Shown piece after piece: positions 3,082 through 44,376 of a stretch of DNA of 64,000 bases. This DNA is from Dimorphilus gyrociliatus (taxonomy: Eukaryota > Animalia > Annelida), in contig CAJFCJ010000025.1 in the NCBI GenBank assembly GCA_904063045.1, positions 434,001-498,000 on the forward strand, in the 5' to 3' direction. Both the position numbers and the translations under genes were made by a program. The notes beneath the pieces are model-generated. The model was not told where the DNA came from, searched no databases, and saw only the letters and a program-made list of their open reading frames with translations. Numbering within the stretch: the stretch's first letter is position 1; every line of letters begins with the position of its first letter.

Positions 3082-4485
3082 TTTTTCGGCTCGTACGGGA
3101 TTTACATCGCTTTTGGAAAGCGTCGCTTAATGAATTGTAAAAGAATTGCTTGGGTAGAAAATCGAAATTTGACGCGTGCATTCGAGCGAAACGTCTCGAG
3201 AACGTGACAGCAACGTTTTGTTCAACGACGCTTGAACAGTGTCCCCCTTTGAAAAAAATTGATGGCGGAGGGCGGTTGACAAATCCGGGTGAAAAACGAC
3301 AACGCACCGAAAAAGCGTTTTTTCTCTCCTCACTGTTTGTTTTTCCCTCTTTGCTTTCGGGCGGCGGAATCGTTTGAACTTTGAACGTGCGTCGAGTTTG
3401 TCATTAGGCTGAGCGTTTTTTTGTCGGCGTTGACCGATCGGCTCAGATCAAAAGAACTGCCGTTTTTTAATTACGGAGTTTTATCTTTGGAACGAGATCC
3501 TTGGTGTTTAGTAGCTGTATGAAATTTCAACTCGATTTATTGCCTTAATGACACGTTTGCGTCTAAATGGAACGAACGACATTGGTAGATGGGCGTGTCT
3601 ATACGATTAGTCTCCTTAAAATGTGAATAAGAGGAGTTATGAGGATAAGGGTAAAAGGATAGCGAGTCGTAGCTCTCTTTTAGACATTTGCCCTTTCGTT
3701 CTCATTTCAGGGGAGAAGAAAGACTTTGAAATGAGAAGCCGTTGTTGTATTTGTAATGTTAATAGAATTAGATATACGGCTGTCTTTTCGTTGTAGTGTA
3801 TATCTGAGTAAGCAACTCTTAACAGGACATTTTTATGGCAGTTGTGCTCTTCGTCTTTAGCTATTAGATTTCTTTTTAAAATTTATCATCCTAAATAGTA
3901 GAAAATGACTTCTTGGACAATTGCCAGAATACACTGCCCCATTTATTTTCTCCGTTTCAATTCCCAAATTGATCATCTCTCCTTTAAAAACAAAAGTAAA
4001 GGCTATTTAAAAATTTATCTAACTATAAGAAAATAGTAGACTTTTATTAAAGATATCATAATTAGGATAGTGTATAAGACTTAACATTCTTTTCCAATTC
4101 TTATTGCAGTTAATGGATTTTTACAATTAACATTTTGAGAGAAGGGTAGGCTGGATTATTTCCTGTTTGATGAATAATCATCGTTGTTGGCTGTATAATT
4201 GAATTAGACTTAAAAAGCGTTTAGCATCTTTCTCTCTTTTTTTATATAACAGAAAAAGAACATCTGAATATTTTTGTATTTTACAAAAAATTACTGAACA
4301 AGTAAATTCGTAAATTTTACTCCACCAAGTATTTAGATGTATATAATGTACAGTAGCTTGTTGTACTAGATGACGCCCAAGTAGAATTTTAGATTGTACG
4401 AAGCGACATCTACCGACTGAAAGTAAATAATACCTTAAAACTTTCCCTAAAATGTCGTGTCACGAAATCGCTTTCCAACCGTGAC

Positions 4486-4727
4486 GGCGTCGACGTCCGA
4501 CGCCATTTTTCTCAGTGAATTCGGAAACGGTAAATCGTTTCCCCTTTGTGTTTTCCTGAATTCGTAAACAAAGTTAGGCTGTTTGACACATAAACAAAGC
4601 TCGACTTAGTGTAAACAGACGAGCTTTTAATGCGCGTAGCCGAACGTCCTTAATTAAGCCTGCGTAAAAAACGCGGACGCCCCACATTTTTTTTACTGCA
4701 CCACCCGGTAATTAATTGCCGATAGAA
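4486..4727. promoter_or_regulatory. CpG-rich regulatory island
   Basis: GGCGTCG/CGACGCC inverted repeat 4486-4504, YY1-like CGCCATTTT 4501, three RTAAACA forkhead motifs (4564, 4590, 4611), TAATTAATTG homeodomain-type site. Confidence 0.45.
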
Positions 4728-5326
4728 GGATAAGAAGGGTGCTTAAGAGAAAAGCGAATTTGCTGTCAAAGTTTTATGCCCCTCTCCTAAAACTTAGCGT
4801 CAGTTACATAGTCTTTGTTCATTTTCAGAATATTTCGTATTTTCTCCTTTTCTTATAGTATCGCAGCAGTAGCTGTAAGTACGAGAGGATTTTCAATGTA
4901 GAAGAGAAAGAAATTAGAGTAAATCTCATTGAATCTATTGATAGCTAGCAGATGTAAAAATCCCTTAATTATGAAATATCAGATTTAATCTCTACAATAT
5001 AGCCATAATTACAAGAAATCCAATTATATTAAATTCTAATTGGAAAGAATGGTTTTACCACTACAAAAGAAAAATAGAAGAAATATAATAAAAGAACCTT
5101 GTTTAACATTTCAAATTCTCATTATTACAAATAGCCAATAATTTACATTTAATTGGTAAACAGAATCAAAAACAGTTTTTGAAAAGTGATCTTTATTTAT
5201 ATCATTCTTGATCTTTTTATGTTACCGAATTGACCGTTGGAAATTGAATTATTTATTTATGTTAGGCCTAGTTGAGAAATTTATGTTCTTTCGGTTTATA
5301 GCAATAAAATACTAAAAGTGAGAGAA

Positions 5327-25319: not shown

Positions 25320-26900
25320 CTGTATAGAAATTACTGCTTTGTTGCATATTATTATGATATAAAAATGTTAATTTGTCACTGCCTGGTTTCAAAAATAGAA
25401 TATCATTTTTGTTTTTCGTGCCAAAATCTGTTATATCACGTTGGATTGGCTATGAGTGTTTTTCATTTTTTTTCTATATGGTAATTAGGGTTTTAAAAAA
25501 AAATACAGATAAATATACCCTTAAAAGTTTGCTTTTCTTTTCTACCTTTACATTTATGTCCACCTTATAACTTTTAATTTTCTGCCTCTTGTGAATATTT
25601 TTATTCTTTTTTGTAAAATAATTCTCTTTCCTTATCCCACCTTCTCTCTTCGCTCTCATTCTCTCTTTCTCTCTTTTGAGTAACGTTAACAAAAAGGGAA
25701 ATACTTGAAAAATTATAAAATAAGTTAGTAGACAAATAAAAAAGAAAAAGTGTATAAATTTTCACTTTTTTAGACTAACTGCCTTGCTCAATAATAAGAA
25801 CAGATGAAGTGTTGATTTTTCGAATTTTCAATGGAATCTTATTACTTTCATAGTGAAGAGTGAATGTCTTACAACTCGAAGAGGTTTTTTCTTTTAACTT
25901 TTAAAATATTATTTCAAAGAGAGTGGTTCCTTTTTTTAATAAGCTCGTTGAAACACTTCACGTGTCCTCATGGAATAAAGCTGCTTTCTTCTTAAGTTTT
26001 TAAGGCAATAAATGTGATTATGTGTGTGTTTATATATGTAAGCTTTCGAGAGCAACAAGTGCTGACATCTTTCATCTAAAAAATATCTCTTTTATCTATA
26101 TAAAAGTAAAGAATTCAACGCGAAACGTTTCTGATTTATTGCCCCATTTCACCTTTCTAGAACGTATATAAATCTAAAAGTAAAGATAGAGAGGTGATGG
26201 AGAGGAAGAGAGAGAGAGAGATAGAGGAAAGAAAAGGGTCAAATTAGGAAAAGGGGATGCTTACAAGGAGTGAATTAAATATTGAAACCATTTTCAATTT
26301 TAATCGATGTCTGCCTAAAAATTTGAACATAAAATTCACTCAGTTATATTGATACTCTTAACAGGTGCTACCGGCTTAACTCTTTCCTTTATACAAATAT
26401 GAATAACTCATAGTTGATCGCCTATATTGATTGTTTCTTTACAAAATATTCTCTTATTTCTAGACATAAAAAATAAATAAAAAAAAGAAAATAAATTACT
26501 TTCAAATATCATTTTTCTACCTTTTCATTTAACATTTTTTTTTATAGAAAAATCCATATTAAATGCTTTTACAATATTTCTTATTTTCTTTTAAATAGCA
26601 AAGAAAGAGAGTAAAGAAATATCCTCTGCTAATAGAAAACTAGATCTTGAACAAGTCGCTCATTTTCTATTATAAAATAAGAGTAGTGCTTTTCCCTTTT
26701 TGAAAAGGCAGTTAAAAAGACCGGTTCAGCTTCTTGTAAGCTTTTTATAGATGCACTGAAATGGAACTTTGTATAAATAAATTTGTTTCTATTCATATCA
26801 AACTGTATACAATAGAAAGGAGTAATAGGCCTATTAAATTTAGACTGTCCTCTCCCTTCCTACTTATTTACGGACAGAGCATTTCTAATGAAATCATAAG

Positions 26901-29900
26901 ATGAAGACTGAAGACGAATTAAGCATTCCACTGACTCCTGAAAGCCAGCGATCAAATTATTCATCCATTGATCAGGATTTAGACAAGAAATCAAACAAAG
27001 ATGTCGATAAGAAGAATAAAGAGTTATCCATTTCCTTTAGTCAACTATTTAATTATGCCGATTTTTGGGATATTATCTTGATTGTATTCTCTTCTTTGTT
27101 AGCTTGTTTGCATGGAATATCGATTCCTATTCTTGTTAAAAAAATAGGCGAAGTTGTCGAGGATTTCGTACAGCAGACGAACGAAAGTGAAATTCGTAAG
27201 GAATCAAAACAGATAGCCGCTCTTGGATTTGGAGTCTTTATTGTCAGTTTTCTACAACTGGTAGGCTGGAAAATATCCTCTCAGAGGCAAAGTTATAAAA
27301 TTAGAGAAGCTTTATTTAAAAGAGTGCTACAAAGAGAGATTAGTTGGTTTCAGCCTGCAAATTTAAAAACAGCAGAAGGTTTAATGTCGAAGACTCTAAG
27401 TTCCTTCGAAAGAGGTATGGGTGATAATCTAGGTTTAGTTATTCATTGGTGTATCACCTTTGGAGTTGCTTTGGTTATTTCATTCACTCTCAATTGGAAG
27501 TTAGCCATAGTTCTATTTGCCGCAAGCTTTGTCATTGCCTTCATTAGTTTCTTAAATAAGGTGATATGGTGTAAACTCTCTTTACGGGAGAGTGAATGCT
27601 ACAGTCAAGCTGATGATGTTGTGCAACAAGCCCTAGATAACATTGACACTGTTACTGCTTTTGATGGCTCTGAGAAGGAATCTTTGAAATATAATGATAA
27701 ACTTCTCAACGTACAAAATATTTCATTAAGAAAGAATACAACATTCGGTGTTTTTCTTGCTGTTATGCTTCTCTTGGAGTTTGGCAGTTATACTTTAGGT
27801 TTTTGGTATGGTCCAAAAATTCTCTATGACAACAAAAAATACGATTTAAAAAAGATAATTACGATTATTTTCCTTATGAGAATTATTTTACTCTTGTCAA
27901 TTGAGAGGATATGCGCGTATTTAAAGCTTGTTAATGAATCAAAGGTTTCCGCTGCTTCCTTATATCCATTATTGCTGACAAAGCCAAGTTTTAGGGATGG
28001 CGAAGTTCTGCCGAGCATCAAGGGAAACATATCATTCGAAAAAGTTTTTTACAAAGTTGATAATGAAATAATGTTAAATGACTTCTCTTTCCAAATCGAA
28101 AGCGGAGAGACATTAGCTATTGTTGATATATCTAGAAAATCTACTCATCACATCTTTGAACTACTTCTAAGATATCATTTTCCAAATAATGGTCTTATTA
28201 AATTGGATGGATACGATATATCAACCCTTAATTGGAAATGCCTACAAAGAGCTTGCGGATTTTTACCAAAACTTCCGGAGGTATTCTCAGTATCTGTTGA
28301 AGAGAATTTAAGGTAAAAGTTTGCTTTTCCTTTTTATTTTTACCAAACGGCCTATAGTCTTTCTACTTTTGTACTTTTACTTATGTTTTCTATTTATCTA
28401 TTTCATAATATTCTTTGAACCGAAGGAATTTGTAATTTTCCATTGATCATTTCTAATATTCTAAGCTCTTATTGAAAACCCATAGATGTCGCCACAGTAT
28501 ATTTTTTATATTAACATTTTAACCAAAAACTAAAATCACTTTTTCCAATTAGATTCGGCAACGAAAATGCAACGATAGATGAAATAACCGAAGTATGCCG
28601 GTTAATGGGTGTTTTTAACTATATAAATAGCCTTCCACGTGGCTTTGAGACAATATTAGATAAGGAAATATATTTACCAGCAATTGAAGCCAAAAAATTA
28701 ACTTTCGCTAGATTATATTTGAGAAACTCTAAAATTGTCCTTCTTGATCAACCATTCTTTAACTTAAAAAATTCTGAAGCTACGATTATTCAGAAGTTAA
28801 TTGACGTTATTAGACAAGATAGAACTGTTATTATACTTGAAAATGACTTGGAAAAAGTTAAAGATTTCGAAAGATTAATTATCACATCTGGAGGAGAGAT
28901 TCTAGAGGAGGGTACTATTGGTGCTTTACAAGCTGACGAAGAGAGTCTATATTCAAGGCTAACTAGTACTGAAGGAGAAAAAGACAATGCAGATGAAGAA
29001 GATACTTGTTCCGCTTACGATTCAATGGAAATGTTTGAAGCGGAGGATGGTATCGATAGATCTAACTCGAATTTACATGGACTTTTAAGAAAGAATTATA
29101 CCAAGACTTTTGCCCTGGTTTGTGGAATATTGTTTTCGTTAATATGTGGGGCTGTCATTCCGACTTTTGCCATTATCTTTTCAAAGATTCTGGGAAATTT
29201 AAAAGATATCGAAAAAAGAAACTACTTTTCATACCTTTTCTTAGCTCTTGGAGGAATAGCTTTCATTGCATTTTCACTTAAAGCATATTTCCTTTCTAAA
29301 TTTAGCATTGCTACTACAGCTCGACTTAGAACTACGTTTCTAAAAGGTCTTCTAAACCAGGACATTGCATATCTAAAAAATCCTAATACGAATATTAAAG
29401 ACTTGATTGATTTATTAACCGAAGGTATAGAAGACATAGAAAATTTAATCAAGAATAGGATGGGAACATCCTTCCAATCATTGGCAGGTAAAAAAAGTTT
29501 AAAATATATATATAGCGTATACTTACCTGGATATTCTCTTTTATTAATAAAAATATCCTATTTGTTTTTTAGCCTTCATATCGGGATTTGTAATAGCATG
29601 CATTTGTTCTTGGAAAATTGCCTTACTAGGTCTAGGGTTTCTCATCTTTACCTTTGTTATTCTTCACCTTGAGTCAAGATTAAATTCCTCAATGTTAAAC
29701 GATAATAAAGCTGGTACGGAAAGCGTTAAATTAATATTAAATGAAACGTTTCAAAATGTAAGGACCGTTACTCAATTTGGAAAGGAAGACTGGATGATTC
29801 GAAGATTCAAAGCGGTCTTTGATAAGAATTACTGCTGGAATATTGTTAAATGTATTTTTTTATCTCTTCTACGAAGTCTGGTTTTTTCCCTTATCTTTTT

Positions 29901-30950
29901 CGCTCTAGCTGCCTCGTTTATCTTATCAGTCAAACTGATAAGAGACGACAAAATAGATTACGTAGACGTCTTTAGGTCGATAACGGCCATCCTCATAGGC
30001 ATCCTTGTGGCATTATATTTCCAGGCTATTGATCGGTTTAATTACTCAAGGTCAATAGATAATATCAAAAAGCTATTAGCCTTATTGTGCAAAAAACCAT
30101 CCGCATTGGACGCCCAATCAAAAATAGGAATTCGGCCAGGCTCAGTCTATGGAATCCTATCCTTTCAGGATGTTTGGTTCTCCCATCCCGCTACGCCGGA
30201 TGTTCCTATCCTGAGAGGAGTAAATTTCAGAGTGAAAAAAGGAGAATCTCTAGCTTTGGTAGGTGACGTTGGAAAAAATACCTGCTTTAGTCTGTTGGAG
30301 AGATTTTATGATCCTACAAGGGGATTAATATCATTGGATGATAATCCAATAGAGCGATTGAATACGAAATGGTTGAGGAATCAAATCGGGTTGGTTGATG
30401 GAAAAGGATTTATTTTTGATGGCACCATCGCTGATGCCATAGCCTACGGGGATAACTCGAGATTGGTTGATATGGATGAAGTCATTAATGCCGCTAAGAA
30501 AGCTAATGTCCATGATTTTATAGCCAACTTACCACACGTGAGTACCCACATATGTTAATAATATTCTACGTCAATAAAATTCTCTTATTGGTTTGATAGG
30601 GATATTTTTCAATAATTGGAAAACGAGGATATAAGCTATCTCTGAACCACCTTCAGAGAATATGTATTGCCAGAGCATTACTTAGACGTCCAAAAATATT
30701 ATTATTGGACAATGCAACATCATCATTAGATATTGAAAGTGAAATTATAGTTCAAGCAGCCCTGGAGGAAGGTCAGCGGAACAGAACGACAATAATCATC
30801 TCTGACCGGTTGTCGTCCATCCATAACGCTGATAAAATCGCCGTCATTAAGCAGGGTCGCATCGTCGAAATGGGCGATCACTCTACGTTAATAGACAAAA
30901 GCGGAATATATTATTCAATGTATGTTGCCGAAACCAAAACATTTAATTAA
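26901..30950 (+). CDS. Full-length ABCB (P-glycoprotein/MDR-like) transporter, TMD-NBD-TMD-NBD, 1220 aa, both NBDs degenerate
   Basis: Exons 26901-28312, 28553-29487, 29573-30537, 30600-30950 total 3663 nt in frame. ABCB1-like segments include LFNYADFWD, CGAVIPTFAIIFSKI, FSHPATPDVPILRGVNF, ICIARALLRRPKILLLD and SSLDIESE. Confidence 0.93.
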
Positions 30951-32496
30951 ACGCTGTTTATTTTAACTTGTGTCAATATACATGTAATATATACTGTCTT
31001 TATGTTTTTGTAATCAGATTTTTCAGACAATTAATGATTGTGTTGCGGCTGTAGAATTTAATCATAGAGAATTATATATATATATAAAAATAACAAGTAT
31101 TTGTTCACTAAAAGAAAGAAATTAGAGAGTAAATGAAAGTTTTCTTAATCTTTTAAGAGTTGACATAAAAGCTTATCAGATAAGAAAATGTCAAAGGAAA
31201 AGTGACGCCGCTTACTTGTCTATTATATATTTAATGCAGTCTATAAATAATAATTATATCTATGTTAACTATGCTAAAGAAAGACTTATTCCTGAAGGAT
31301 AGTGAATTATAGTCACCTGATGTTACTAACGTAATAAAATAATCTTCATTGGGAAAAAATGGTAGGCCTATTAAAAGAAAGCTCCACTATGTTTTAATAA
31401 TTTAAAAACAAAAATTAGTTTTTCAAAACGTATCTTATTCTTGTTGTAAATATACTTCAAAGTTGAGCACTAGGACTTGGAACTATTAATTTTTCTATTT
31501 TAAAAGATATATATTTTTTATGTAAATATGATATACTTTACAAAAAGAACGTTTTTATATTAGAGACGTTGAAGAAAAAAGCTATTAGTATACAAATTTT
31601 TAAATAATTCATCTCTTAATGCAGCGTATTCATATCATAGCATTCTACAGAAAAAAAGAATTGTTTTTTATTTTTAAAAACAAAACCTGAATTTATGAAA
31701 GAAATAGTAACAAGACGAAATAATAACGTAAATTAGAGGAGAAAGGTTTTTATTCTTTTTTTTCTTTTTTGATAGATAAAAAAAACGTCCATTATTTTTA
31801 TCAAATTCTGCCATACTATGCATATATAAATAACTATGCGTATAAATATTCTCATTAACTAAGCGAGAGATATAAAGAATAATTTAAATGATTAAAAACG
31901 CTCTATTAAATATTGTTACATGTAGCAAAATTTCTAATTTGTAACGTTTAATTATCGTACAAAAAGTGTTAAATAGGATATTTAATATTTAATTAGTGTA
32001 TGGGTATTAATAAATAGAATTATAATGTATATTAAAAAAAAGAGAGAAAAGTGAACTTTCTTTTATCTTTTTCTTACCTTTAATTAGCCTTTCTTTAAAT
32101 TCTTTAAACTTTTTAAATATCAATAGAATAATTACATTTGTTTATTAAATATATATATCTATATATATATCTATATATATATTTATATATTTGAAAGAAT
32201 ACTTAATTATTACTTTCATAGTTATGTGTTTGTTCTTTTTTTGGAAGCGTAAAGTATAACGACGAAATATATTCTATTATACCAGTTTACATAGAAGTGT
32301 TAAAGAAAAAATAGCTAAATTATCGCTCTTTACCAACAAAGAGAGTTTTTTAATTCAATGAAAAAAATCCATTAATAATCTAAAAGCATTTTCAATTGCT
32401 ATTGTCTAATAATGATTTTATTCTAAAATCCAACAGAGAATGACTTTTTTAACGACTATTAAAACGAAATCTTTTGGGATTTAAAAGAGAAAAAAA

Positions 32497-33893
32497 ATGA
32501 GCTTTCAGGAACAAGTGAAAAACTTTTCGAAATCAAAATTAAAGAAAACTTCAACATCGTTAAAAACTGAAGATGGCCGATTAGTACAATTAAATATTCA
32601 TGATCTTTCGTTTAAAGTAAGAAATTTAGAAAATAATTTACCAGGATTTATAGTGGATAATAAACCAGATTTAACGATAAATGAAATACTCCCAGGTTTA
32701 TACTTATGTAAGTATGATTGAATATATTGTAATTATATTTTACAAATAGATAAAATAAGAATGTAAATATCTATTATCGTTGAAAATTTTTTTCTTTTAA
32801 AGATAGAAATAATCATATTTTGCCTATAAAACAGGATGAAAGCTTTCTCTCTCTGTATATACTTTCTTTGTATTATTTATTTGTATTTTATAATTTAATA
32901 GGTTACGAGAAGGGCGAGGAGGGAGGCTATTCAAATAATGGAATTTGATAGAGAGAGTTATATTTGCAAAACTAATGAACTTTACTTGTAATTATAAAAT
33001 AAATCTATTAATAACTTTCTTACAGGAAGTAATAAGCTTTCTGCATTTGCTAATGGCAAAAGATGACGTAGACTTACTTATTGATCTACATAAATTATTA
33101 ACTAATTGTTTCAGACATGTCTAGCAAAGAGTAATGTAAGAAAGTCTTTAATAGTTGTATAATTTTCATTACAAATTATAATAAAGAAAGTTTGCAGTAA
33201 ATTAAAGAGTCAATAAAATATTAGGAAATGGCATAAGAATCATTTTCATTCATTATGAAAAGTTTAACTAAGCAAATAACTCTTAAAATATTCTTAATTA
33301 AAATGTCAATAACCGTTAGGAAAAGTAAAAATTCTTGGAAAACAATATTAATGCATAATATGAAATTCAAATATATTTAAATAATGTTCTTCTCTCCCTC
33401 TCCCTCTCTCTATCTCAGTCTATATCTTTATTTATCATATTATTTTTTTTACCTTCATTATACTTTTATATTTTTGTTATATTAATAAAATGTCTTTTTT
33501 CTTTATTTAGCTGGTCAAGATGTGGCTAGAGATTTAAGTATCTTAAAATCAAGTGGTATAACACATATACTAAATTTGGCGCCAATAATTCCATGCTCAT
33601 TTCCGTCTGAATTTGCTTATAAAACCGTAGAACTTCTCGATGTACCGGAAACTGATCTAATTTCCTCTCTGGAGGACTGTCTCAATTTTATTGACTTAGT
33701 TTTGAAAGATTCGAAAGGAAACGTTTTGGTTCATTGTAATGCGGGTGTCTCTAGGTTGGTGTTTGAATGAGTTTAAAGGGCCCTTTGTATAAAAATGTCA
33801 ATCTAATTCTTTTACATATCCTTTTTTCTGTCTGACTGTCTGTCTGTATTTTTCCTGATTCTTTCATACATACCCACTCTACTTCTCTATCTC

Positions 33894-33930
<37 letters not shown>

Positions 33931-34198
33931 TTTATTGGTGAATGACTACATTAACCAATCGTCAACTGTCACTTAGCAATACCAAATTATTTGAACCTAT
34001 TGATGTTTCATTAGATTTAGAATTTGATGCCTGTTTAATGAATTTTCCAGGGCTCCTTCGATAGTCATTGCCTTCGTGATGAGAAAACTAAAGTTGGATT
34101 ATGACGATGCTCTTAAGTTCGTAAAGGACAAGCGGCCTTGTATACGCCCAAATGACGGTTTTCAGAAGCAATTGAGAGAATTGGGGAAAACTGTTTAA
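32497..34198 (+). CDS. DUSP19: Atypical dual-specificity protein phosphatase 19-like, 200 aa
   Basis: Exons 32497-32707, 33511-33754, 34051-34198 (603 nt). Motifs SGQDVARD, ITHILN, catalytic VHCNAGVSR and RPCIRPNDGF. Confidence 0.9.
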
Positions 34199-35219
34199 AT
34201 TCTTTATCTTCTATATAATCTGATTATTTATATAATACATAATTTGAATGAATGAAAAACTATCAACTCGATTAATGTTTTGTTGATAAAACTAGAAATT
34301 GGTTTATTTTCTCTCTTATTTTTTACAATGACATATGTTTGCATAGCATTGATGTAGATTTGTAACAATTAGTTACAGAGTTGTAATTACTTGTCAAATT
34401 AAACAAGGTAGGTGAATAAACTTTTATTCTATAATCTAAAAGTTGTACTTTGTAATAGAGAAGCTTTTAAATTAAAAATGCATGTAAACCCTTTTTCATC
34501 TGTCTTCCTTTTTTTTATCTAGTTTTTTCTACATTACACTTTACTCTAAGCTTTGTCTCTTGTAAATTTAGTAAGTTGGATGAACTGTACTAGATTTTGG
34601 ATTATTTTGCATATTTTTTTTCTTACTTTTGTCTCCTTTTTTGGATGTTTTATTTATTTACTTTACATAAGAAATTATCCCCTGGACTAGATAGTTTTAT
34701 GTTACATTAAAACCCTATTACAAGAAATATAATAAGACTAGAAAAAGCATCAAACAATAGCTGGAAACATTGGTTGATGACTCGAATCTTTAGGGAAGAG
34801 AATTTAGCCTTTCTATCTAGGTATGAAAGCATCAAAAGCAAAATCATCTTCCTTTTTTGTCTCAAATAGCGCAAAATAATTCTTTCTTGCTTACTCATTG
34901 CGATACATTCATAAACTATTTTATTCTCTTATTACACCTAACAAAACATCTAATAATAATTGTATAAACAACAATAGAAAATTAGGTAATAAAGTTATAT
35001 TAAGAAGTTTTTACATGGAAAAGAGATATTGGATCAAGGTTGCCAAGTGATAAGATAAAGGTTATTATAAATGTATCACAATTTCGTACTTTAGATAAAA
35101 GGACGAAGGCAAAAAGGAAAGGAAAGACAGAAAATACCGAGTAATGCGAAAGGATGTTTTGACAAATAACTACTATAAATATATGTCTATATATATATAT
35201 ATTTATATGTACACTTACA

Positions 35220-36234
35220 TTACGTGCGTCTTGCAAAAGTAGTTATGACAAAATCTTTGATGAAACTGGTTTCTTCTTCTTTTTTTTCTAACTCAAATAG
35301 TGTGTTATTAAATTTTTTACATCAAAGAATCGGCAACTTCAAACCGACAAACCTAAAAATTTTGTTACATATTAGAATTTTTAACATACCATCTCTCTTT
35401 CGTTTAAATATGATATTATCAATATTTATGGTAGGCTGATATTGACAATCTATCTTACTCTATATCCCCCTTTACTATAACCTGGCAAAGTGGTTGGGTT
35501 AAAAGGAATGGGGGAGTGGTTCCTAAAAAGTAGCGTGTAAAGAAGGGAATATGGGATGAAGAAAATAGCTCAAATTTAAAAGAGTAATATTTTATTAAAT
35601 TTAGATCATTCTTAAAGGAGCAATGTAGACGAAATACCACACTGCAACATGTATCTTATTTTCATCTTTTTCAGTAAAATACAATAATCTTTTCTATTTC
35701 TCTCTTCCTCTTCTATTTTTAAACCAATAAACAAAAAAAATGCTATATTTAAAAGAAACCTAATGAATCATTATTTATTAAAGCCAAATGTTAAAAATTT
35801 TCTCTCTTATCCAATGAACGCCTACTCAAATATCAATATTGAATGACAGGCGTTATATAGACTCGTGAAAATTTAAATATTTCTTTTTAAATAGCCAAGT
35901 TTTCTTTGATGTTTTTAGAATATTCACGTATTTAAAGATTCAGTAGGAAGTAAGTAATTTCTACTTTTTTCCGGTTTGAAGACAATATTAAAACGTTTAT
36001 ATAAAAGCTAATTTAACTTAATAACCCTTAATTAAGAAATTGTGTACCGTCTAAATAACGTTATTTTAAAAAATGTACTATTCGTTTTCGTTTGTTATGA
36101 AGCTTTTCAATCCCATATGAGATAAAAGTCCTTCTCTGCATACTGATATCTGGAGGCTGGTTAAACATGTTGTATAGTGTGATAAAACTTTGCGCATATA
36201 TAACCTAAAGATGAGGGAGTAGTTAAGAGTATGG
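35220..36234 (-). other. Candidate small spliced minus-strand transcription unit; coding status unknown
   Basis: Exon-like blocks with canonical signals: 36234 or 36204-36144 (gtatgc donor), 35522-35459 (ctttttag acceptor, gtaaga donor), and 35352 onward (atttttag acceptor). One chain is phase-consistent. No homology recognised. Confidence 0.3.
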
Positions 36235-38334
36235 CTGTTTAAGGCCAAAAAGAAAAGGAATTAGTTCGCCCACAACGGGTCACTGCCTTCTTTACTTAAT
36301 CTCTCTTCTTTTACATTTTTCATTAATAAAACCCTATTTACTTTTCTTTGAACGAACAAATAAATTGCTTATTAGACAAGGTTTCCTCTTACAAACACTT
36401 TCTGATTAATTAATAACCACGCTCTTTAGATTTCATTCAAATAAGAAAAATAGAATATAAAACAATCGATCGCTTAAATTTGTATACCTTTTTAAATTAT
36501 TCACTTTAATTATGATATTTTCATTTATTATTCTATTAAAATACCATTGAGATATTTATCAATTAATTTAATATTTATTCTTTTATAACAATCTACAAAT
36601 CTTGAAATTTCCTATCAATTGAGCTGTCTATTACAAAATTTCATGGAACAGGAGAAAAGGAAGAGAAGGAAAAATGAAAAGAAAAGTAAACATTTATGGT
36701 AGGAATGGAAAAAAATGGAAATGGATAAGAAAGAAGATATACAGATGAATATGAAAAAAAATTCATTATGTAAATTACACAATGTAACTTTGATATTCAT
36801 AGGAAAAATTCCATTCTTGTTACTTTTAGTAGAAGACTACATATGTATATAAAAATAATGCAAATAGTGCAACCTTAGATTCTAATCCTATGTGAAGTTA
36901 TAAAAAGAATAATAGTATTGAATTACAAGGTCACAAAGTCCTACCATGCGACCTTGATTATTATTTTGTGTTATCAAAAAAATTGAAGTGAATAATACAA
37001 ATAAGAGAATGAAGAGGAAGATTAGGGAGAAATTCTGTGCATGCATATACTGTATATACAGCATATACTATTTATAGAATTTATATAGTATATAAAAAAA
37101 GTTCATTATCCTTTAATTAGAAAATATAAGCTTTAGTTATTTATTAAATAAAACTTATCTTGTATTTAAACTTTTACTAAAACAGATTAGTATATTCACT
37201 TACTTTAAACTCGATCTATTAAAAACAATGTCAGAGTTATAGATGATTCTTGTTAAAGGTTATAGACATTATCTCTATGTTTAAGAATATAGTATATACA
37301 CTACTTATATATCACTGTATATATTTTTATGTCATATGTACATGGAATACTATGTATAAAATGTATGTTATTTCCTATTTTAAGACATTTTACTGCTTGG
37401 ATAGATAAAAGGGAAAAAAACTAGAAATATACCTTTTTTTATATTTTTCACCTATTTAAATAGGTACTTTACAAGTAACGCTTATATTAATCGTCAAAAA
37501 TTTACTCTTTATACTAAACAATTAGACGTCAATGGTACAATTAACTTTAATAGGTTATAAAAAGGAATTATAAGTCGAAATATGACAAATCGATTTCCGC
37601 AACGAGAAAATAAGTAGGAGAAGAATCTGTAAATTGTCAAATATATTGTCCTAATTTTTGGATATACCATATAAAGCTTCAACTTTCATATGTTGTTAAC
37701 TTTCACTTGTTTTATAACTGTTATTTTATGTGTAACGATGAATTCTCATTGGACGAATAAATAATCAAATATAGTTTATTTTAATATGTAACAGTTATGG
37801 GATAATTTAAATCTTAAATTTCTAAACAAAGTCGTAAAAAAAAGATGTCTTAGCTTACTTTAGTATATAAATATAGTGATGTGATTCTTACTATTGGAGG
37901 GTTTTGTTCTTTGAGATCTCCTCAGATGTCTAAAATCGTATAACTAACCTGTTTATAGTCGTAATGTGCAAATATATACCATTATCTTATTGAAAAGAAG
38001 CAAAAATGAGCAAAGAACAATAATGAATAATTTTACAACGAACTGACCATCAAAAACAGGAAATACTTCAATTGTCCTGCAACTGTAGTAAATGTTTGCA
38101 ATACTTATTAATAACCTCTTTATATTTATATAAATGAACAGAGTGTACATAAAAATGGAAAGTAGTCCGTTAAAAAGCCCTACTTTACATTGCCAAGTAA
38201 GAGAACAGTGCAAATATAGTATATATAAAGTCGTTGAGTAGTAGAGACTTAATAAGTAACTTTGCTAGTTTTATTGAGTTGTAAATTATAGAAAAAGGGA
38301 TAATTCTATATTTATATATATACAGTATATACAG

Positions 38335-38368
<34 letters not shown>

Positions 38369-41300
38369 CAGTAAATATATTGTATATAGGTTATATGTTA
38401 TAGACGTGTATACAATAAGAAAAGTATCGAACCGTTCCGCCATAATTTACTGTTGCCAAAGGATAGTTTGCTCACACACACCAGAACTAATAAATCCTTT
38501 TTTTTATATTTATTTCCTCAGTTTGACCTTACTAACTGAAATTTTTTATTCCTTTTATTTTTCTATTTATCCTTCTATTATCATCTTAACCCGTTCTCTT
38601 TTTTCTTTCTCTTCAAATTTTACTATGTGTATTGTTTTTCTATCTCTTTTTCTTACTCCCGTTTTGTCTCACCCTCTGCTTTCCCTTTCTCTTTCCCTTT
38701 CTCCTGCCAACTATCAAAAGGGAATGATTTACGAGTATTGACTTTATTCGATCCGCTAGGACTTTTTTTTTGATAGGAACCAAGCGTTACATGACGGAAA
38801 GTTAACAACCAAGAGATTTATCTATTGAAACATATCTGTATATATATTGTATATATTAATATATATATATATATATAACTGTGTTTAACCTCTTTCTAGT
38901 CCTTTAAACGTCACTTAAAAATTCACAAGATTACAAACATGTTCTGTATGTTAAAGAGCCCACTAGGCTTAATTGAATCAAGTTTATTTGCAGGAAGAAG
39001 AAAGATATAAAGAATTTTAGTAATGCTATTATTTACTATTTCAATAAAGAAAACATTACATCTTTATAGTATTTAATATCCGTTTAATTTATTAAGTTAA
39101 TTTATTTAAAAAGATTCTTAACAGCATTTAAAAAGCAAATATATAATTTAAATATATTCTTTATACCTAACCGTAAAGGCAGACATTATTATTAATAGCT
39201 AGCCTTTCATCTTGTATTTTTTACATATATATATATAATATGATCTAAAGAAGACATGTTAATAAAAAGTAGGGAAAGGAGGGAGGGGGGCGAGAGGGGA
39301 AAAAAAGATAATAAAAAAAAAAGAATGCGGATACGAATCAATTTATTCGTTCGGAAAACTTACCCAATTGTTCTATATACACCGTAATTTCTTTCTTTTC
39401 TTTATTGTTTTATGTATTAAATCCAATTTACTATTTTTTATAGAGTTAACGTACTTTCATTTTGTATATTATTGTTTTGTTTTTGTTTTTTTATAAAAAC
39501 AAGAAATTAAATAATAAATGTCCTTGTAAATATTTTTTTTGTCTTTACTTTCCTTGTCCTAAAATAAAAAAAAAAGTTTACAGTTGGTAAGTCGAGCATT
39601 ATTCTTCACTGGTCATTGCATTTCCTGAGATTTATAGAAGAGGATTATAGTCATGCTCAGTTCCACATTAATAGTTTTTTGTTGTGAAAAAAAAATCGAT
39701 TCACTCTATTTTTCATCTTTTTTTTGCTCTGTTTAACAAAAACAACTAAAAATTTATAGAAATAATAAACTCCTGTATTCATAAATCTTTAATTCTTCTC
39801 ATTTATTTATCATCTTCAATGTAGAAAATGATAATGAAAGGAAAAGTCATTTTTAACAGATTCCCTACTTTCTATATAAAATATTTTTTTCTAAAAATGG
39901 GAGAAAAAAAAGGAAATTGTTCACTTAGGCGTAAGAAACAAAATGGATTACAAACAAACACACTTTATTCCAAGATTTAATCTACTTTTTGGCTACTTTT
40001 TTTCCCCAGTATCCAAACAGGAAATAAAAGTTGACGTATAACAAAATATAAGTATGAAGAGGATAGATAGATGGGAGAATGAGAAAGATTGTGAAAAAAT
40101 AAAGGGGAAATGAAGAGACAAAAAGTAAAATTGTAGGAAAAGAGTAAGATATTAAGTTATTAATTATAAGATAAAAATTGCAAATATAGGTTTAAGATGG
40201 AAAATAAACGAAAAAAATACTATAAATAGCTAGATACTATATATGTAAACTATACTATGTATAGTTACTAGTCTTGGCGAAATTTATGTACTATGGATGG
40301 AATGTACTAGATTTAGTATTTAAAGAAAAATGGGAAAGAGGAGAAACGTATAATAAAAGAAAAGTTGAATTATTAAGAAGCGGAGGTGTATATTTGTTAA
40401 TTAGTTAAACAAAGCTCTTAAATATGTAATAGTAGAATAATGTATTTGTGTAACAGTATTTCAAAGCCAATCAACTAATGCAATGTACTAGTTTTATAAT
40501 ATTTCTTCTTTCCCAACTCAAATTTCTCTATTTAGCTATAATTCTATTTTTAGATCTATAAATAATTGTTTTAATATAAATCTATTAAAGAGAGAAATAT
40601 AGAATTTTTATAACTCGAATATTTTTCTAAACAATTAACTATTTATATAAAGTTGAATTTACTAAGTTTTCTTATATTATGCTATTTTATTAAATCAAAG
40701 GGAAAAATTGATGTGATATAAAGGTTATTTCGACGAGTAATATTATGTATTTATTTAATTATTATTATTATCTTGCTCCCTCTTCCTCTTCCTCTTCCTC
40801 ATGCTCTTCTTCTTCTTTTTTCCACTGATTGTTTACTTTCGTTGAAAAAGTTAAAACAAAAAAGACATAACTTCCTCTCTTCCTCTTTTCTTTTTTATAT
40901 ATATTTTAAGTACAATAATACTTTACTCTTTACTTACAATTTGACAGCTTTGAAAGATTAGAGGAAAGATAGTAGTCATTTTAGATGAGGAACTTCAATA
41001 GAATGACTACTTTTGTAAAGAGTACTTGACAAACAAAAGGATAAAAAACGGCTGCTTGAACAGCTGGTTTACGCTGTGTGGTTATGGTAGGTAGGCTTTA
41101 AAAAGAGAAATTGTGGGAAAACAGAGGATAATATTCTAATAGGTTAGGAATAGAAGAATTATGTGTAAAAAATGACGATTTATGTTATTCGATCTTTATG
41201 ACGTGTCCATCAGTTTAATCTAGGGAATTTAAATTAAAGCGAATACTCTATAAAAAAAACTGATCTGTATGCGATAACGAAAAACTCTAGGTCCTTGATG

Positions 41301-43131
41301 TCACGCTTTTCCGATTAATGATAGTTGTTGGAACATTTCCAACAGCCTAATTTAGACGCCTCATCCGGCTAGTTTCACCCCTTAATCCCACAACGTCCCT
41401 AATAGCTAGTCTATGTATTTCAACTTGTTTTTTTTAAAATAACCTATTCTATTGAATTCTCTTGAAAGATTGATAAATTATCTAATGTCCAAATACATAG
41501 ATTTTAAAATGGCGGGTGTTATTGTTAACAGAGATCAACAAATGAGAGAAAAAAAGTGGGAAATTTTTTTGTTTTCTTCTTTTTGTATTCTTACGGTTTT
41601 CTTTTGTCTTTAATTAAATATAAGGAAAAACAAGCTGCTTACGTCGCTTTACGAAATTTCAAGTAAAGTGGGTGATTTCCTTCAAGTGAAAAAAAAACAA
41701 AATCGTTTAATCTTTCGTCTCTCTTTAATTCTTTCTCTATTTCTTTCTCGTTGTATCGATCAAATAATTTATACAAGATTATTTAAATGGTCAATTAACC
41801 TGTTTTATCTTCTTTCCTTCCTTTATCCTCGTCTCTTCGTTGACTTTTTTTTGTCATTTTAATAGCTAAAACAATTTATTATAAGTAAAAAAAAAAGGTT
41901 AATCAATTATATGAAAATGTAATAAAAGAATATAGGATAAAAAAACAATAGTGATATAATAATAATTATTATAATAGCTGGAAAACCTTTTACTTTTCTT
42001 CTACAAGATATTATTTGATTAAAGTAGAAATATATCGAAGAATATCTTAAAATGATGATATATTTCCCTAGAAAGAGTAAGAAGAGTGGTTGGAAAAGAA
42101 TAGCACCCTCAAGTAAAAACAAAATATATATATATCATACAGTAAGTTACAGCTTCTATAAGGAGAAAAAAAACACTTTTTTTTTCGCTGATCTTGCCCT
42201 CTTTTGTAGTTTTAACTTTAACCTTCCACTAGGCAATTTGTACGCATGAGAAGGGGAGAAAAGTGCGATATCCACTAGTCAAATAGATATTTGTTTACAT
42301 GATTTTTTTTTCCTTTTTCTATATTATACGCTTTCTTTTCAATTTTATACATTTTCAACTAATTGTTGACCTAAATATTAACTATTTAATAATAGACGCC
42401 ATTGGTTTTGCGTTTCTTTTTTAATTAATGAAGTTAATATTTATTTGTTCAATATCCATTCGATATGATTATATTTTTTACTGAAAAATATCAATTTAAA
42501 ATTGTGTATTGTAAACTAAAACGCTTCTTCTCTTTGCCTAAGAAAAATGTCTATAATATGCACTATATATACTATTTTTACAAATTATCAATAGGTATGT
42601 TATAAACTATATGATTTGTAAATTTTCTCTGTTTTCTTTACCTAATACTTTTAAAAATCAAATTATAACGTGAAACTGAAGAGGTGAAAGGATTGGAAAA
42701 AGTGTGAAGTGGGTGGAATAGGAGAGCTGCGGGATTATATTATACAGTATATAAACACTTGAAGGTAAGAGAGATAGAATGATAGATAGATAGATGGATA
42801 GATCGGCGGCGGAGAAAAGCATATTATAGAAAGTATGAAAAGAGAAACGCTTACAACTTTATACAGATACAATGAGATAGGAAGAGAGGCTTCTTTTTCT
42901 ATATCCCCATCAAAGTCTACCTAGCTTATTACTACAAGTGTAAATTTACTATGAATTGGTCAGAAGGCCTATACTCAAAACGAATAATATCTGATAATAA
43001 ATGATAAAGATTTTAATAAATTATGCATAAACTAAGCATTTGTACGTAAAAGGAAAATATTACAGGTTTTCAAATGCATCTATCAACGCTAGACGTCGCT
43101 GTTCTAGACATCAACTGTCTCATTCGTCGAA

Positions 43132-44376
43132 ATGGAGGCTAACATTAACACCAATAATTCTGCCAACTGGATTCAATTATGTACTACAAGAGAAGTGGAT
43201 ACAATTCACAGGAGTGACAATGACAAGTTATACCTTGAAGCCGAAAAGTTTGTTGACAAACTTATACCGACTATATGTCTTTTCGGAATTGTTGGAAATC
43301 TCTTGAATATAATTGTATTAACTCGGAAGCAACTGCAAAGTGTTATGGATCGACTGGAAAAATCAGCCCACGATGGACTTTTAGCTTTATCCGTTAGCGA
43401 TCTATGCTATTGTTTGTCAAGTTTCCCATTATATTTACAAACTGATTCCAATAAGTATACGCATATGTTTATGGAAAATTCGTTCATGGTTTACTATTCA
43501 ATGTACAAAGGTTACGTATTCAATGTGTTTATGATGTGCAGTGCCTGGCTGACTATTGTTATGGCTGCAAGTAGGTATGTTGCAGTTTGTCACGCTTTAC
43601 AAGCGAGAAGAGTAATCTCCGTAAAGTGTACAAGAATAGCCATCATACTGTGTTTCGTTGTGTCATCGGTTTTCAATACTCCAGATTTATTCGGTGTTAA
43701 ACGATACAAATGTCATCCACCAATTAACTGTACATGTTATTTTGTTGATTATCCTAATCCTTTCGGAAGCAAAATGATCCATAAAGCATATATTTACCTT
43801 CAGCCTATCTTAATTACTTTTATACCTCTATGTATTTTGTTAGTGTGTAATATCTTTCTACTTATAGAATTAAAAAGATCAGCAAGAATGAGGCGTCTAC
43901 ACGTCATACAAGCAACATCTTCGACTCCTAGGTTGAGAGTAACCTTGACTTTAATCTCTATTATTTTGCTCTTTATTTGTTTCGTCTTTCCTTCGGAAGT
44001 TTTTAAATTTTTGAAATCTGAACCTCAAGTGCATCAAAAGTTCGATAATTCAAAACATATTGCCAATACTATATGTAATGGGATGGTGGCCGTCAATTTC
44101 TCCGCAAACTTCTTCCTCTACTGTTTTGTTAATCCAAACTTTAGGAGTACAATGAGAAACATGCTATGCGGTAGATTAAAGCAGAGTAACGGAATTTATA
44201 GTGGAGTTGGTGGTCATACAATAATAGCCACTTCAATGACAGAAGTAAATGCCATAGGTATAAGAAAAGTAAAAGGAAGCGGAGGGATAGGAGGAGGTGG
44301 AGGAGTAGCAGGAGGAGGAGGAGGGGGAGGAGGAAGTGATAAATGTGAAATGACACTATTGCCCAAGAGTCTCTAA
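43132..44376 (+). CDS. Intronless class A GPCR, FMRFamide/sex-peptide-receptor-like neuropeptide receptor, 414 aa
   Basis: Seven hydrophobic segments. GIVGNLLNIIVL (TM1), LSVSDL (TM2), AASRYVAVCH (SRY for DRY), FIPLCILLVCN (TM5), NFSANFFLYC (TM7). Gly-rich C-tail. Confidence 0.92.
   Translation: MEANINTNNSANWIQLCTTREVDTIHRSDNDKLYLEAEKFVDKLIPTICLFGIVGNLLNIIVLTRKQLQSVMDRLEKSAHDGLLALSVSDLCYCLSSFPLYLQTDSNKYTHMFMENSFMVYYSMYKGYVFNVFMMCSAWLTIVMAASRYVAVCHALQARRVISVKCTRIAIILCFVVSSVFNTPDLFGVKRYKCHPPINCTCYFVDYPNPFGSKMIHKAYIYLQPILITFIPLCILLVCNIFLLIELKRSARMRRLHVIQATSSTPRLRVTLTLISIILLFICFVFPSEVFKFLKSEPQVHQKFDNSKHIANTICNGMVAVNFSANFFLYCFVNPNFRSTMRNMLCGRLKQSNGIYSGVGGHTIIATSMTEVNAIGIRKVKGSGGIGGGGGVAGGGGGGGGSDKCEMTLLPKSL

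What the first reader, a model, noticed from the sequence alone, without database searches (positions are those of the whole stretch)
26901..30950. Intact ABCB transporter with both ATPase sites dismantled: candidate pseudo-ATPase
NBD1: Walker A reads LAIVDISRKST (canonical LVGxSGCGKST), Q-loop has K, signature LPAIE (LSGGQ), Walker B LLDQ (catalytic E to Q), H-loop LENDL (no His). NBD2: Walker A LVGDVGKNT (2-aa deletion), Q-loop VDGK, signature LSLNH, Walker B LLDN (E to N), H-loop SDRL (H to D). These residues are established as required for ATP binding and hydrolysis; even asymmetric ABCs keep one consensus site. Yet the 1220-aa frame, both TMDs and all splice sites are intact, which argues against a simple pseudogene. 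Inference: a non-catalytic ABC acting as a regulator, scaffold, receptor or passive conduit.
Basis: partly seen in the sequence, partly recalled or inferred. Interest (0 to 1): 0.8.

Follow-up and report, generated by a model that had tools for sequence, protein, structure and literature searches.

The report
P-glycoprotein relative lacking both ATP sites
A tiny marine worm expresses, and a distantly related species has kept under selection, a full-size drug-pump-type (P-glycoprotein/ABCB1-like) membrane protein in which every motif needed to bind and split ATP is replaced in both engine domains, so it very probably does something other than ATP-driven pumping.

Summary
Window 26901-30950 (+) is a 4-exon, 1220-codon gene with the order TMD-NBD-TMD-NBD. 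Its closest solved relatives are human ABCB1, ABCB4 and ABCB11. Walker A, Q-loop, signature, Walker B and H-loop are non-canonical in both NBDs, and the NBD2 P-loop is two residues short.

It is not a pseudogene:
- Two independent RNA data sets hold the mRNA, spliced at exactly the three predicted GT-AG introns.
- A second species (Logan contigs L001-L003) has the same gene: same intron positions, 1219 codons, 67% amino-acid identity and the same broken motifs.
- dN/dS is about 0.14 with dS saturated. The uncorrected pN/pS is 0.29 (CI 0.26-0.32).
- NBD2 is the most constrained domain (88% identical, ratio about 0.06).
- A neighbouring GPCR gives dS 1.4 between the same two organisms, which fits orthology.

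In a tree the pair lies inside the animal ABCB1/4/11 clade, on a very long stem with short tips.

Best reading: a selectively maintained, ATP-hydrolysis-dead ABCB1 derivative. Its actual role is untested. No third species was found. First readers flagged ABCC4- and ABCA-type candidates elsewhere in this genome; these are unchecked. The joined full-length protein was neither searched nor folded.

The parts
26901..28312 (+). Exon 1. Encodes a conserved N-terminal tail (aa 1-27), TMD1, and the first half of NBD1 (aa 1-470 plus 2 nt of codon 471).
   Evidence: Sequence. Pfam ABC_membrane, E 1e-34. Aligns to human ABCB1 residues 20-488. The RNA contig of X2 starts at 26851.
28122..28145 (+). NBD1 Walker A equivalent VDISRKST (aa 408-415). 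No GxxGxGK.
   Evidence: The orthologue has ADISRKTS.
28269..28271 (+). NBD1 Q-loop position. Lys457 stands in place of Gln.
   Evidence: Lys also in the orthologue.
28313..28552 (+). Intron 1 (240 nt, GT-AG).
   Evidence: Removed in RNA contigs of X1 and X2.
28553..29487 (+). Exon 2. Encodes the second half of NBD1, the linker, and the first half of TMD2.
28674..28688 (+). NBD1 signature equivalent LPAIE (aa 512-516), in place of LSGGQ.
   Evidence: The orthologue has LPTFE.
28734..28751 (+). NBD1 Walker B IVLLDQ (aa 532-537). The catalytic Glu is Gln.
   Evidence: The orthologue has ILIEQ, so the Walker B Asp is also changed.
28833..28850 (+). NBD1 H-loop equivalent ILENDL. The His position is Asn568.
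   Evidence: The orthologue has IITNEL.
29488..29572 (+). Intron 2 (85 nt, GT-AG).
   Evidence: Removed in the RNA contig of X2.
29573..30537 (+). Exon 3. Encodes the second half of TMD2 and NBD2 up to just before the X-loop and signature.
   Evidence: Pfam ABC_membrane plus ABC_tran. Aligns to human ABCB1 residues 845-1163, E 8e-95.
30262..30282 (+). NBD2 Walker A GDVGKNT (aa 1013-1019). The P-loop is shortened by two residues.
   Evidence: The orthologue has GDVGKTA with the same deletion.
30400..30402 (+). NBD2 Q-loop position. Gly1059 stands in place of Gln (VDGKG).
   Evidence: Identical in the orthologue.
30538..30599 (+). Intron 3 (62 nt, GT-AG).
   Evidence: Removed in RNA contigs of X1 and X2.
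30600..30950 (+). Exon 4. Encodes the rest of NBD2 and the stop codon.
   Evidence: Pfam ABC_tran. Aligns to PGP-1 and ABCB1.
30636..30650 (+). NBD2 signature LSLNH (aa 1117-1121), in place of LSGGQ.
   Evidence: The orthologue has LSLSN.
30696..30713 (+). NBD2 Walker B ILLLDN (aa 1137-1142). The catalytic Glu is Asn.
   Evidence: The orthologue has ILLLNN, so the Asp is also lost.
30801..30812 (+). NBD2 H-loop SDRL (aa 1172-1175). His is Asp.
   Evidence: Identical in the orthologue.
29872..29984 (+). Block A. A coding stretch (TM11/12) about 96% identical at nucleotide level between the two species. Unexplained synonymous constraint.
30320..30545 (+). Block B. A coding stretch in the NBD2 core, reaching the exon 3 donor, about 95% identical at nucleotide level between the two species.

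Best explanation
This is a functional, expressed gene for an ABCB1 (P-glycoprotein)-derived full-length ABC protein that has lost the chemistry of both ATP sites. I call it a pseudo-ATPase.

Shown here:
- The architecture is TMD-NBD-TMD-NBD.
- The transcript is correctly spliced.
- An orthologue in a deeply diverged second species carries the same derived motif states.
- Purifying selection acts on all domains and is strongest on NBD2.
- In the tree the stem branch is long and the tips are short, which fits a burst of change followed by constraint.

Inferred from established ABC enzymology:
- Neither composite site can hydrolyse ATP.
- Canonical Mg-ATP binding is probably lost too. NBD2 has a P-loop two residues short. 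NBD1 has no P-loop at all. There is no Q-loop Gln, no LSGGQ, no catalytic Glu and no H-loop His in either NBD.
- The protein therefore cannot run the ATP-switch transport cycle.

My committed guess for how it works: it folds like inward-facing P-gp. NBD2 stays docked on the equally conserved intracellular loop 2, with TM1 and TM11/12 also conserved. It acts without ATP. The more likely role is a ligand-binding or regulatory membrane subunit, as SUR is for Kir6. Less likely is a passive or ion-gradient-driven conduit, as SbmA shows to be possible for this TMD fold. The reason for this ranking is that the most constrained part is a cytosolic domain rather than the membrane pore.
For: Motifs.

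Expression and splicing. X2 contigs match the window exactly and lack all three introns. X1 is an independent metatranscriptome holding a roughly 1% different allele, spliced at introns 1 and 3, with no indels.

Orthologue. It has the same 4 exons, exon lengths of 1412/935/962/351 nt against 1412/935/965/351 nt, and 67% amino-acid identity.

Selection.
- dN is 0.217 and dS is at least 1.6, so omega is about 0.14.
- Uncorrected pN/pS is 0.29 (CI 0.26-0.32).
- The corrected ratio is 0.06 for NBD2 and at most 0.1 for NBD1.

Calibration. The neighbouring GPCR has dS 1.4 between the same two organisms.

Key Mg/ATP positions differ between the two species, as expected if they no longer bind nucleotide. 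The residue after the Walker A Lys is N in one and T in the other. The Walker B Asp is D in one and N in the other.

Tree. The pair sits inside the metazoan ABCB1/4/11 clade (SH-aLRT 99). The stem is 1.83 substitutions per site and the tips are 0.10 and 0.25.

Within-species variants are 13 non-synonymous to 8 synonymous codons, giving pN/pS of about 0.4.

Literature: mutating one catalytic Glu already stops ABCB1, and known degenerate ABC proteins keep one consensus site (PMC7544095, PMC7756269).
Against: - No biochemical data exist. Loss of ATP binding and hydrolysis is inferred from sequence only.
- NBD2 keeps the Walker A Lys, the D-loop (SSLD) and most of its scaffold, so some non-canonical nucleotide binding cannot be excluded.
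- Only two species carry the gene in all the databases searched, so selection rests on one pairwise comparison with saturated dS.
- The within-species pN/pS of about 0.4 is only mildly below neutral (P about 0.03-0.06) and comes from low-depth contigs.
- The run kind of X2 is not on record. Its RNA nature is inferred from the intron-less contigs.
- The proposed role (regulatory or binding subunit) has no direct support. No partner, location or phenotype is known.
- No full-length structural model was made.
Confidence: 0.8

Rival explanations
1. It is a young or unprocessed pseudogene that has not yet acquired stops. The motif losses are neutral decay.
For: All catalytic motifs are gone and Pfam no longer recognises NBD1. 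Within-species pN/pS of about 0.4 is not very low.
Against: The frame is intact over 1220 and 1219 codons in two species separated by dS of at least 1.4. There is a single codon indel. Intron positions are identical. Omega is about 0.14 and no bootstrap exceeds 0.36. The mRNA is spliced in two data sets. NBD2 is 88% identical while synonymous sites are saturated.
Confidence: 0.02
2. It is still an ATP-driven exporter that binds and hydrolyses ATP through non-canonical residues at one site, most likely the site built on NBD2.
For: NBD2 is the most conserved domain. It keeps the Walker A Lys, the D-loop, the Walker B hydrophobic strand and the overall ABC fold signal. In canonical pumps the NBDs are also the best-conserved part.
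Against: The site built on NBD2 lacks a full-length P-loop, the Q-loop Gln, the catalytic Glu and the H-loop His. Its partner signature in NBD1 is LPAIE. The residue after the Walker A Lys (N or T) and the Walker B Asp (D or N) are not even conserved between the two species. A single Glu mutation arrests human ABCB1 (PMC7544095).
Confidence: 0.06
3. It does not hydrolyse ATP but still binds a nucleotide. It would work as an ATP/ADP sensor or as a nucleotide-glued structural dimer, like the degenerate site of ABCC proteins but at both sites.
For: Degenerate sites in ABCC1, CFTR and SUR bind ATP stably and have a structural role (PMC7756269). NBD2 keeps Lys1017 and has a His at the A-loop position that could stack on adenine.
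Against: Known degenerate sites keep an intact Walker A. Here one P-loop is shortened by two residues and the other is absent. Both signatures are lost, and the Mg-coordinating positions vary between the species.
Confidence: 0.12

Closest known systems
ABCB1 / P-glycoprotein (with ABCB4, ABCB5 and ABCB11): metazoan full-length ABCB exporters
   Same: The order TMD-NBD-TMD-NBD, the type IV (PF00664) membrane domains and the length (1220 aa) all match. These are the best hits in the PDB (E 1e-87 to 1e-95). In the tree the gene falls inside the metazoan ABCB1/4/11 clade.
   Different: Both ATP sites are dismantled, whereas ABCB1 has two consensus sites and ABCB11 has one. NBD1 is only about 27-35% identical to canonical NBDs and NBD2 about 44-58%. 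The stem branch is about three times the median tip length. The gene has only 3 introns.
ABC exporters with one degenerate site (ABCB11, TAP1/2, all ABCC proteins including CFTR and SUR, TM287/288, TmrAB, Pdr5)
   Same: Non-canonical Walker B, H-loop and signature residues are kept by selection, and a former catalytic site has taken on a structural role (PMC7756269).
   Different: In those proteins the changes cluster in site 1 only. Walker A stays intact and binds ATP, and site 2 remains a consensus ATPase. Here both sites are affected and both Walker A motifs are destroyed.
SUR1/SUR2 (ABCC8/9), ABC proteins that act as regulatory subunits and not as transporters
   Same: They set the precedent that a full ABC exporter scaffold can be kept for a non-transport, regulatory role.
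   Different: SUR has a TMD0-L0 module that binds Kir6, and it still binds and hydrolyses Mg-nucleotides. The worm protein has no TMD0 (its N-terminal tail is only about 45 aa) and no intact ATP site. This is a functional analogy only, not membership.
SbmA/BacA (SLiPT family), an ABC-exporter-type membrane domain without an NBD, driven by the proton gradient
   Same: It shows that this TMD fold can carry out alternating access without ATP (PMC8442886, PMC13316013).
   Different: SbmA is bacterial and homodimeric, and it has no NBD at all. Here both NBDs are retained and NBD2 is the most constrained domain, which argues against a role carried by the TMDs alone.

Membership tests
Metazoan full-length ABCB (ABCB1/4/5/11-type) proteins | Domain order TMD-NBD-TMD-NBD in one polypeptide, with PF00664 membrane domains. 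| tested here: met
   Pfam finds ABC_membrane twice and ABC_tran for NBD2. NBD1 is placed by alignment to ABCB1 residues 380-650.
Metazoan full-length ABCB (ABCB1/4/5/11-type) proteins | Phylogenetic placement within the clade. | tested here: met
   In the exon-3 region tree the pair lies inside a 27-row metazoan clade (SH-aLRT 99), near protostome ABCB1-like sequences (94, not starred). The PDB ranking is ABCB1 > ABCB4 > ABCB11 > PGP-1 > plant ABCB > Ste6 > half transporters. The long branch makes the exact sister group unsure.
Metazoan full-length ABCB (ABCB1/4/5/11-type) proteins | At least one consensus ATP site (Walker A GxxGxGK[ST], Walker B hhhhDE, LSGGQ, Q-loop Gln, H-loop His). | tested here: not met
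   All five elements are non-canonical in both NBDs of both species.
Metazoan full-length ABCB (ABCB1/4/5/11-type) proteins | ATP-dependent substrate export. | not testable with these tools
   This needs ATPase and transport assays.
Pseudoenzymes (catalytically dead homologues kept for another function) | Clear homology to an active enzyme family together with loss of the residues essential for catalysis. | tested here: met
Pseudoenzymes (catalytically dead homologues kept for another function) | Expressed, and maintained by purifying selection after the loss. | tested here: met
   Spliced RNA is present. Shared derived motif states go with omega of about 0.14 between orthologues, calibrated by the neighbouring gene.
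Pseudoenzymes (catalytically dead homologues kept for another function) | Measured absence of catalytic activity. | not testable with these tools
   A biochemical assay is required.
SUR-type regulatory ABC proteins | An N-terminal TMD0-L0 module and functional Mg-nucleotide sites. | tested here: not met
   Only about 45 residues precede TM1. Both nucleotide sites are dismantled.
SbmA/BacA (SLiPT) secondary transporters | An ABC-type TMD without any NBD, as a homodimer. | tested here: not met
   Both NBD-homologous domains are present, and NBD2 is under the strongest constraint.

The most novel reading that the evidence does not exclude
A full-length ABC exporter scaffold has been turned into an ATP-independent protein, and its dead NBD2 has taken on a new essential role such as partner binding or allosteric control. 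This would be a functional class not yet described for ABCB proteins. First readers flagged ABCC4-type and ABCA-type genes in the same genome. If those prove equally dead and equally conserved, dinophilid annelids would have converted ABC pumps into non-pumps repeatedly. In addition, two stretches of exon 3 carry an unexplained tenfold drop in synonymous divergence. They may hide a second, nucleotide-level function such as an exonic regulatory element or an overlapping transcript.
Probability: 0.45. Interest if true: 0.8.

Novelty: new variant of a known kind. Interest (0 to 1): 0.65.

Why it matters
All current models of ABC exporters make the ATP switch at the NBD dimer the engine. Even the many 'degenerate' family members keep one consensus site and an ATP-binding second site.

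Here a natural P-glycoprotein homologue has lost both sites, including the P-loops, and selection has kept it over a long evolutionary distance. It offers a ready-made experiment on three questions:
- What can the P-gp fold do without ATP?
- What is an NBD good for apart from catalysis?
- How are transporters recruited into regulatory or receptor roles?

It also carries a practical warning. Counts of 'multidrug pumps' in invertebrate genomes that rest on homology alone can include non-pumps.

Tried and rejected
- **Pseudogene.** Rejected by expression, by the intact orthologue and by omega of about 0.14.
- **L001 is a paralogue, with gene conversion explaining the low-dS blocks.** Rejected as the main reading for four reasons.
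  - The neighbouring GPCR has dS 1.4 between the same two organisms.
  - The window's own exon-1 ORF is not on record in that run.
  - No second, L001-like copy was laid from runs X1 or X2 at 90% likeness or above.
  - Flanks and introns do not align.
- **Tandem paralogue in the window.** None found.
- **A conserved RNA structure explains blocks A and B.** Not supported. For block A, z is -3.25 in the window but -0.56 in L001. For block B, z is about 0. Rfam gives only a sub-threshold SNORD75 hit upstream of the gene. Inverted repeats are short.
- **A third species.** None found in any of these searches:
  - the exhaustive HMMER search of 1.8e9 representatives;
  - the word search of 5.8e9 proteins with exon 3, limited to fragments of 177-562 aa;
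  - two degenerate-pattern scans of JGI metagenome contigs for the clade-specific Q-loop and P-loop peptides.
- **Naming the organism behind SRR23372228.** Not found in the papers or in the scan's notes.
- **Literature on ABC proteins with two dismantled sites.** Nothing in the library searched.
- **Synteny.** It could not be tested. The L001 flanks (0.6 and 1.9 kb) have no match in the window.
Full report
**What is there.** Window 26901-30950 (+) holds a four-exon gene.
- Exons are 26901-28312, 28553-29487, 29573-30537 and 30600-30950.
- The three introns are GT-AG, 240, 85 and 62 nt long.
- The coding sequence is 3663 nt, which is 1220 codons plus TAA. In one search the exons were concatenated in memory only, to number codons.
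- Pfam finds two complete ABC_membrane domains. It gives only a weak ABC_tran signal for NBD2 (35 and 29 bits) and none for NBD1.
- Each exon's best solved relatives are human and mouse ABCB1 (E 1e-87 for exon 1, 8e-95 for exon 3). ABCB4, ABCB11, C. elegans PGP-1, plant ABCBs and yeast Ste6 follow. Half transporters are far behind.
- No second copy lies in the window.
- According to notes of earlier agents of this scan, the genome is that of the miniature annelid Dimorphilus gyrociliatus. I did not verify the species name independently.

**The motifs.** I aligned residue by residue to ABCB1, PGP-1 and Hydra ABCB1.

| Element | NBD1 | NBD2 | Canonical |
|---|---|---|---|
| A-loop | Tyr lost | His | Tyr |
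| Walker A | VDISRKST | GDVGKNT (two residues short) | GxSGxGKST |
| Q-loop Gln position | Lys | Gly (VDGKG) | Gln |
| Signature | LPAIE | LSLNH | LSGGQ |
| Walker B | IVLLDQ | LLLDN | hhhhDE |
| H-loop | ILENDL (His is Asn) | SDRL (His is Asp) | His present |

- Only the NBD2 D-loop (SSLD) and the Walker A Lys survive.
- Each ATP site is built from Walker A, Walker B, Q-loop and H-loop of one NBD and the signature of the other. Both composite sites are therefore dismantled in all their elements.
- NBD1 is about 27-35% identical to canonical NBDs and NBD2 about 44-58%.

**It is expressed and spliced as predicted.**
- Run X2 is from the window's own organism, and its contigs match the window exactly. 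It holds contigs covering 26851 to beyond 31400 that skip exactly 28313-28552, 29488-29572 and 30538-30599.
- Run X1 is an independent metatranscriptome from a coral sample. It holds a roughly 1% different allele, spliced at introns 1 and 3, with no insertions or deletions.
- X2's library type is not on record. Its RNA nature is inferred from the intron-less contigs.
- The X1 allele differs at 13 non-synonymous and 8 synonymous codons. That gives pN/pS of about 0.4 and P of about 0.03-0.06 against neutrality. These come from low-depth contigs, so this is weak evidence.

**A second species keeps it.**
- An exhaustive HMMER search of 1.8 billion representatives with exon 1 found one close relative, P0001 (64% identical, no gaps). 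Everything else was at 29% identity or below and came from scattered eukaryotes.
- P0001 lies on Logan contigs L001-L003 (runs SRR23372228, 29 and 31).
- L001 carries the whole gene, with exons at 635-2046, 2502-3436, 3692-4653 and 4716-5066. The introns sit at the same codon positions and phases. Exon lengths are 1412, 935, 962 and 351 nt against 1412, 935, 965 and 351 nt in the window. It has 1219 codons and no stops.
- It shares the derived states: ADISRKTS, Q-loop Lys, LPTFE, ILIEQ, IITNEL, GDVGKTA with the same two-residue deletion, VDGKG, LSLSN, LLLNN and SDRL. The loss of both sites therefore predates the split of the two species.
- Positions that would coordinate Mg-ATP differ between the species. 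The residue after the Walker A Lys is N in one and T in the other. The NBD2 Walker B Asp is D in one and N in the other, and the NBD1 Walker B Asp is D in one and E in the other. This is expected if they no longer bind nucleotide.

**Selection.** I made codon alignments exon by exon (1216 codons). They give 67% amino-acid identity, dN 0.217 and dS of about 1.6 (saturated), so dN/dS is about 0.14 by Nei-Gojobori. The uncorrected pN/pS is an upper bound. It is 0.29 (bootstrap CI 0.26-0.32, maximum 0.35). ML estimates per exon are lower or similar.

| Domain | Amino-acid identity | dN/dS (corrected) | pN/pS (uncorrected) |
|---|---|---|---|
| NBD2 | 88% | about 0.06 | 0.11 |
| NBD1 | 65% | at most 0.1 | 0.26 |
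| TMD1 | 62% | about 0.18 | 0.33 |
| TMD2 | 63% | about 0.18 | 0.32 |
| Linker | 37% | about 0.31 | 0.56 |

- As a calibration, the single-exon GPCR 12 kb downstream (43132-44376) has an orthologue in the same run (L004). It is 83% identical, with dS 1.4 and omega 0.065.
- The two organisms are therefore different, deeply diverged species, and the ABCB divergence fits orthology.
- The window's own exon-1 ORF is not on record in that run. Flanks and introns do not align.

**Phylogeny.**
- In a tree of the exon-3 region (54 rows, IQ-TREE quick, LG+C20), the pair (support 100) lies inside a metazoan ABCB1/4/11 clade (SH-aLRT 99), near protostome ABCB1-like sequences.
- The stem is 1.83 substitutions per site, against a median tip of 0.62. 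The branches after the split are 0.10 and 0.25.
- This fits a burst of change when catalysis was abandoned, followed by constraint.
- The long branch makes the exact sister group unsure.

**What it most likely does.**
- Shown: it is an expressed, selectively maintained ABCB1 derivative.
- Inferred: it cannot hydrolyse ATP and probably cannot bind Mg-ATP canonically. A single catalytic-Glu mutation already arrests human ABCB1 (PMC7544095). All described degenerate ABC exporters keep an intact Walker A at the degenerate site and a consensus second site (PMC7756269).
- The most conserved segments are the N-terminal 27 residues, TM1, intracellular loop 2 (aa 243-268), TM11/12 and almost all of NBD2. 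In P-gp, by general knowledge of the fold, intracellular loop 2 docks onto NBD2.
- The strongest constraint thus sits on a cytosolic domain and its docking loop, not on the pore. I therefore favour a non-pumping binding or regulatory role, by analogy with SUR.
- I rank a passive or gradient-driven conduit second. SbmA shows that this is possible for the fold (PMC8442886, PMC13316013).
- None of these roles is tested.

**Rivals.**
- Pseudogene (0.02): refuted as described above.
- Cryptic ATP-driven pump (0.06): unlikely, given the state of both sites.
- Nucleotide-binding but non-hydrolysing sensor (0.12): not excluded.

**Breadth and novelty.**
- No third species was found.
- No paper in the library describes an ABC transporter with both sites dismantled and conserved.
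- First readers of this scan flagged an ABCC4-type and an ABCA-type gene with the same property elsewhere in this genome. These are unchecked leads.

**Left out.** There is therefore no full-length or NBD-dimer model.

**Unexplained.**
- Two stretches of exon 3 are 95-96% identical at the nucleotide level between the species: 29872-29984 and 30320-30545.
- There dS is about 0.2, against more than 2 in the rest of exon 3. Omega is about 0.08 in both.
- Neither RNA folding nor Rfam explains them.

Noticed in passing
window 29872-29984 and 30320-30545 (weaker: 27036-27125): These coding stretches show a tenfold drop in synonymous divergence between the two species. dS is about 0.2, against more than 2 in the rest of exon 3. 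Among identical residues the same codon is used in 36/41 and 62/76 cases, against about 55% elsewhere. Block A holds a perfect 10-bp hairpin (29921-29943), and both of its changes in L001 give G.U pairs. RNA folding is not consistently better than shuffled sequence, and there is no Rfam hit. The cause is unknown: it could be an exonic regulatory element, an antisense transcript or something else.
   Followed up: partly
window 26901-26981 (aa 1-27): The cytosolic N-terminal tail MK(T/N)EDELSIPLTPESQRSNYSSID(Q/R)DL is 25/27 identical between the species, although about half of the identical residues across aa 1-30 use different codons. The next 20 residues are variable. It contains a YxxPhi-type motif (YSSI) and a TP site. 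It may be a sorting or phosphorylation signal.
   Followed up: no
window 43132-44376 (+); L004 818-2128: A single-exon rhodopsin-type GPCR (Pfam 7tm_1 / Srw-like). Its orthologue in the same public run as L001 is 83% identical in amino acids, with dS 1.4 and omega 0.065. I used it here only to calibrate the divergence of the two species.
   Followed up: partly
window 30034-30096: In run X2 the transcript contigs break between 30033 and 30067. The upstream contig ends with 30 nt that map to the opposite strand at 30067-30096. X1 covers the gap and carries an A>G difference at 30044. This is probably an assembly artefact at a variable site.
   Followed up: no
window 31000-43000: About 12 kb downstream of the gene has very low G+C (0.25-0.28) and no ORF of 130 codons or more. 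This is unusually gene-poor for a genome described as compact.
   Followed up: no
window 26664-26710 (+): A sub-threshold Rfam match to the C/D-box snoRNA SNORD75 (19 bits against a gathering score of 50, E 0.24) lies about 190 nt upstream of the start codon. It is most likely chance.
   Followed up: no
same genome, other windows (notes s1-081070 and s1-081554): First readers flagged an ABCC4/CFTR-type gene and an ABCA-type gene in this genome as also having both ATPase sites broken. If that is true, loss of catalysis in ABC proteins is recurrent in this lineage.
   Followed up: no
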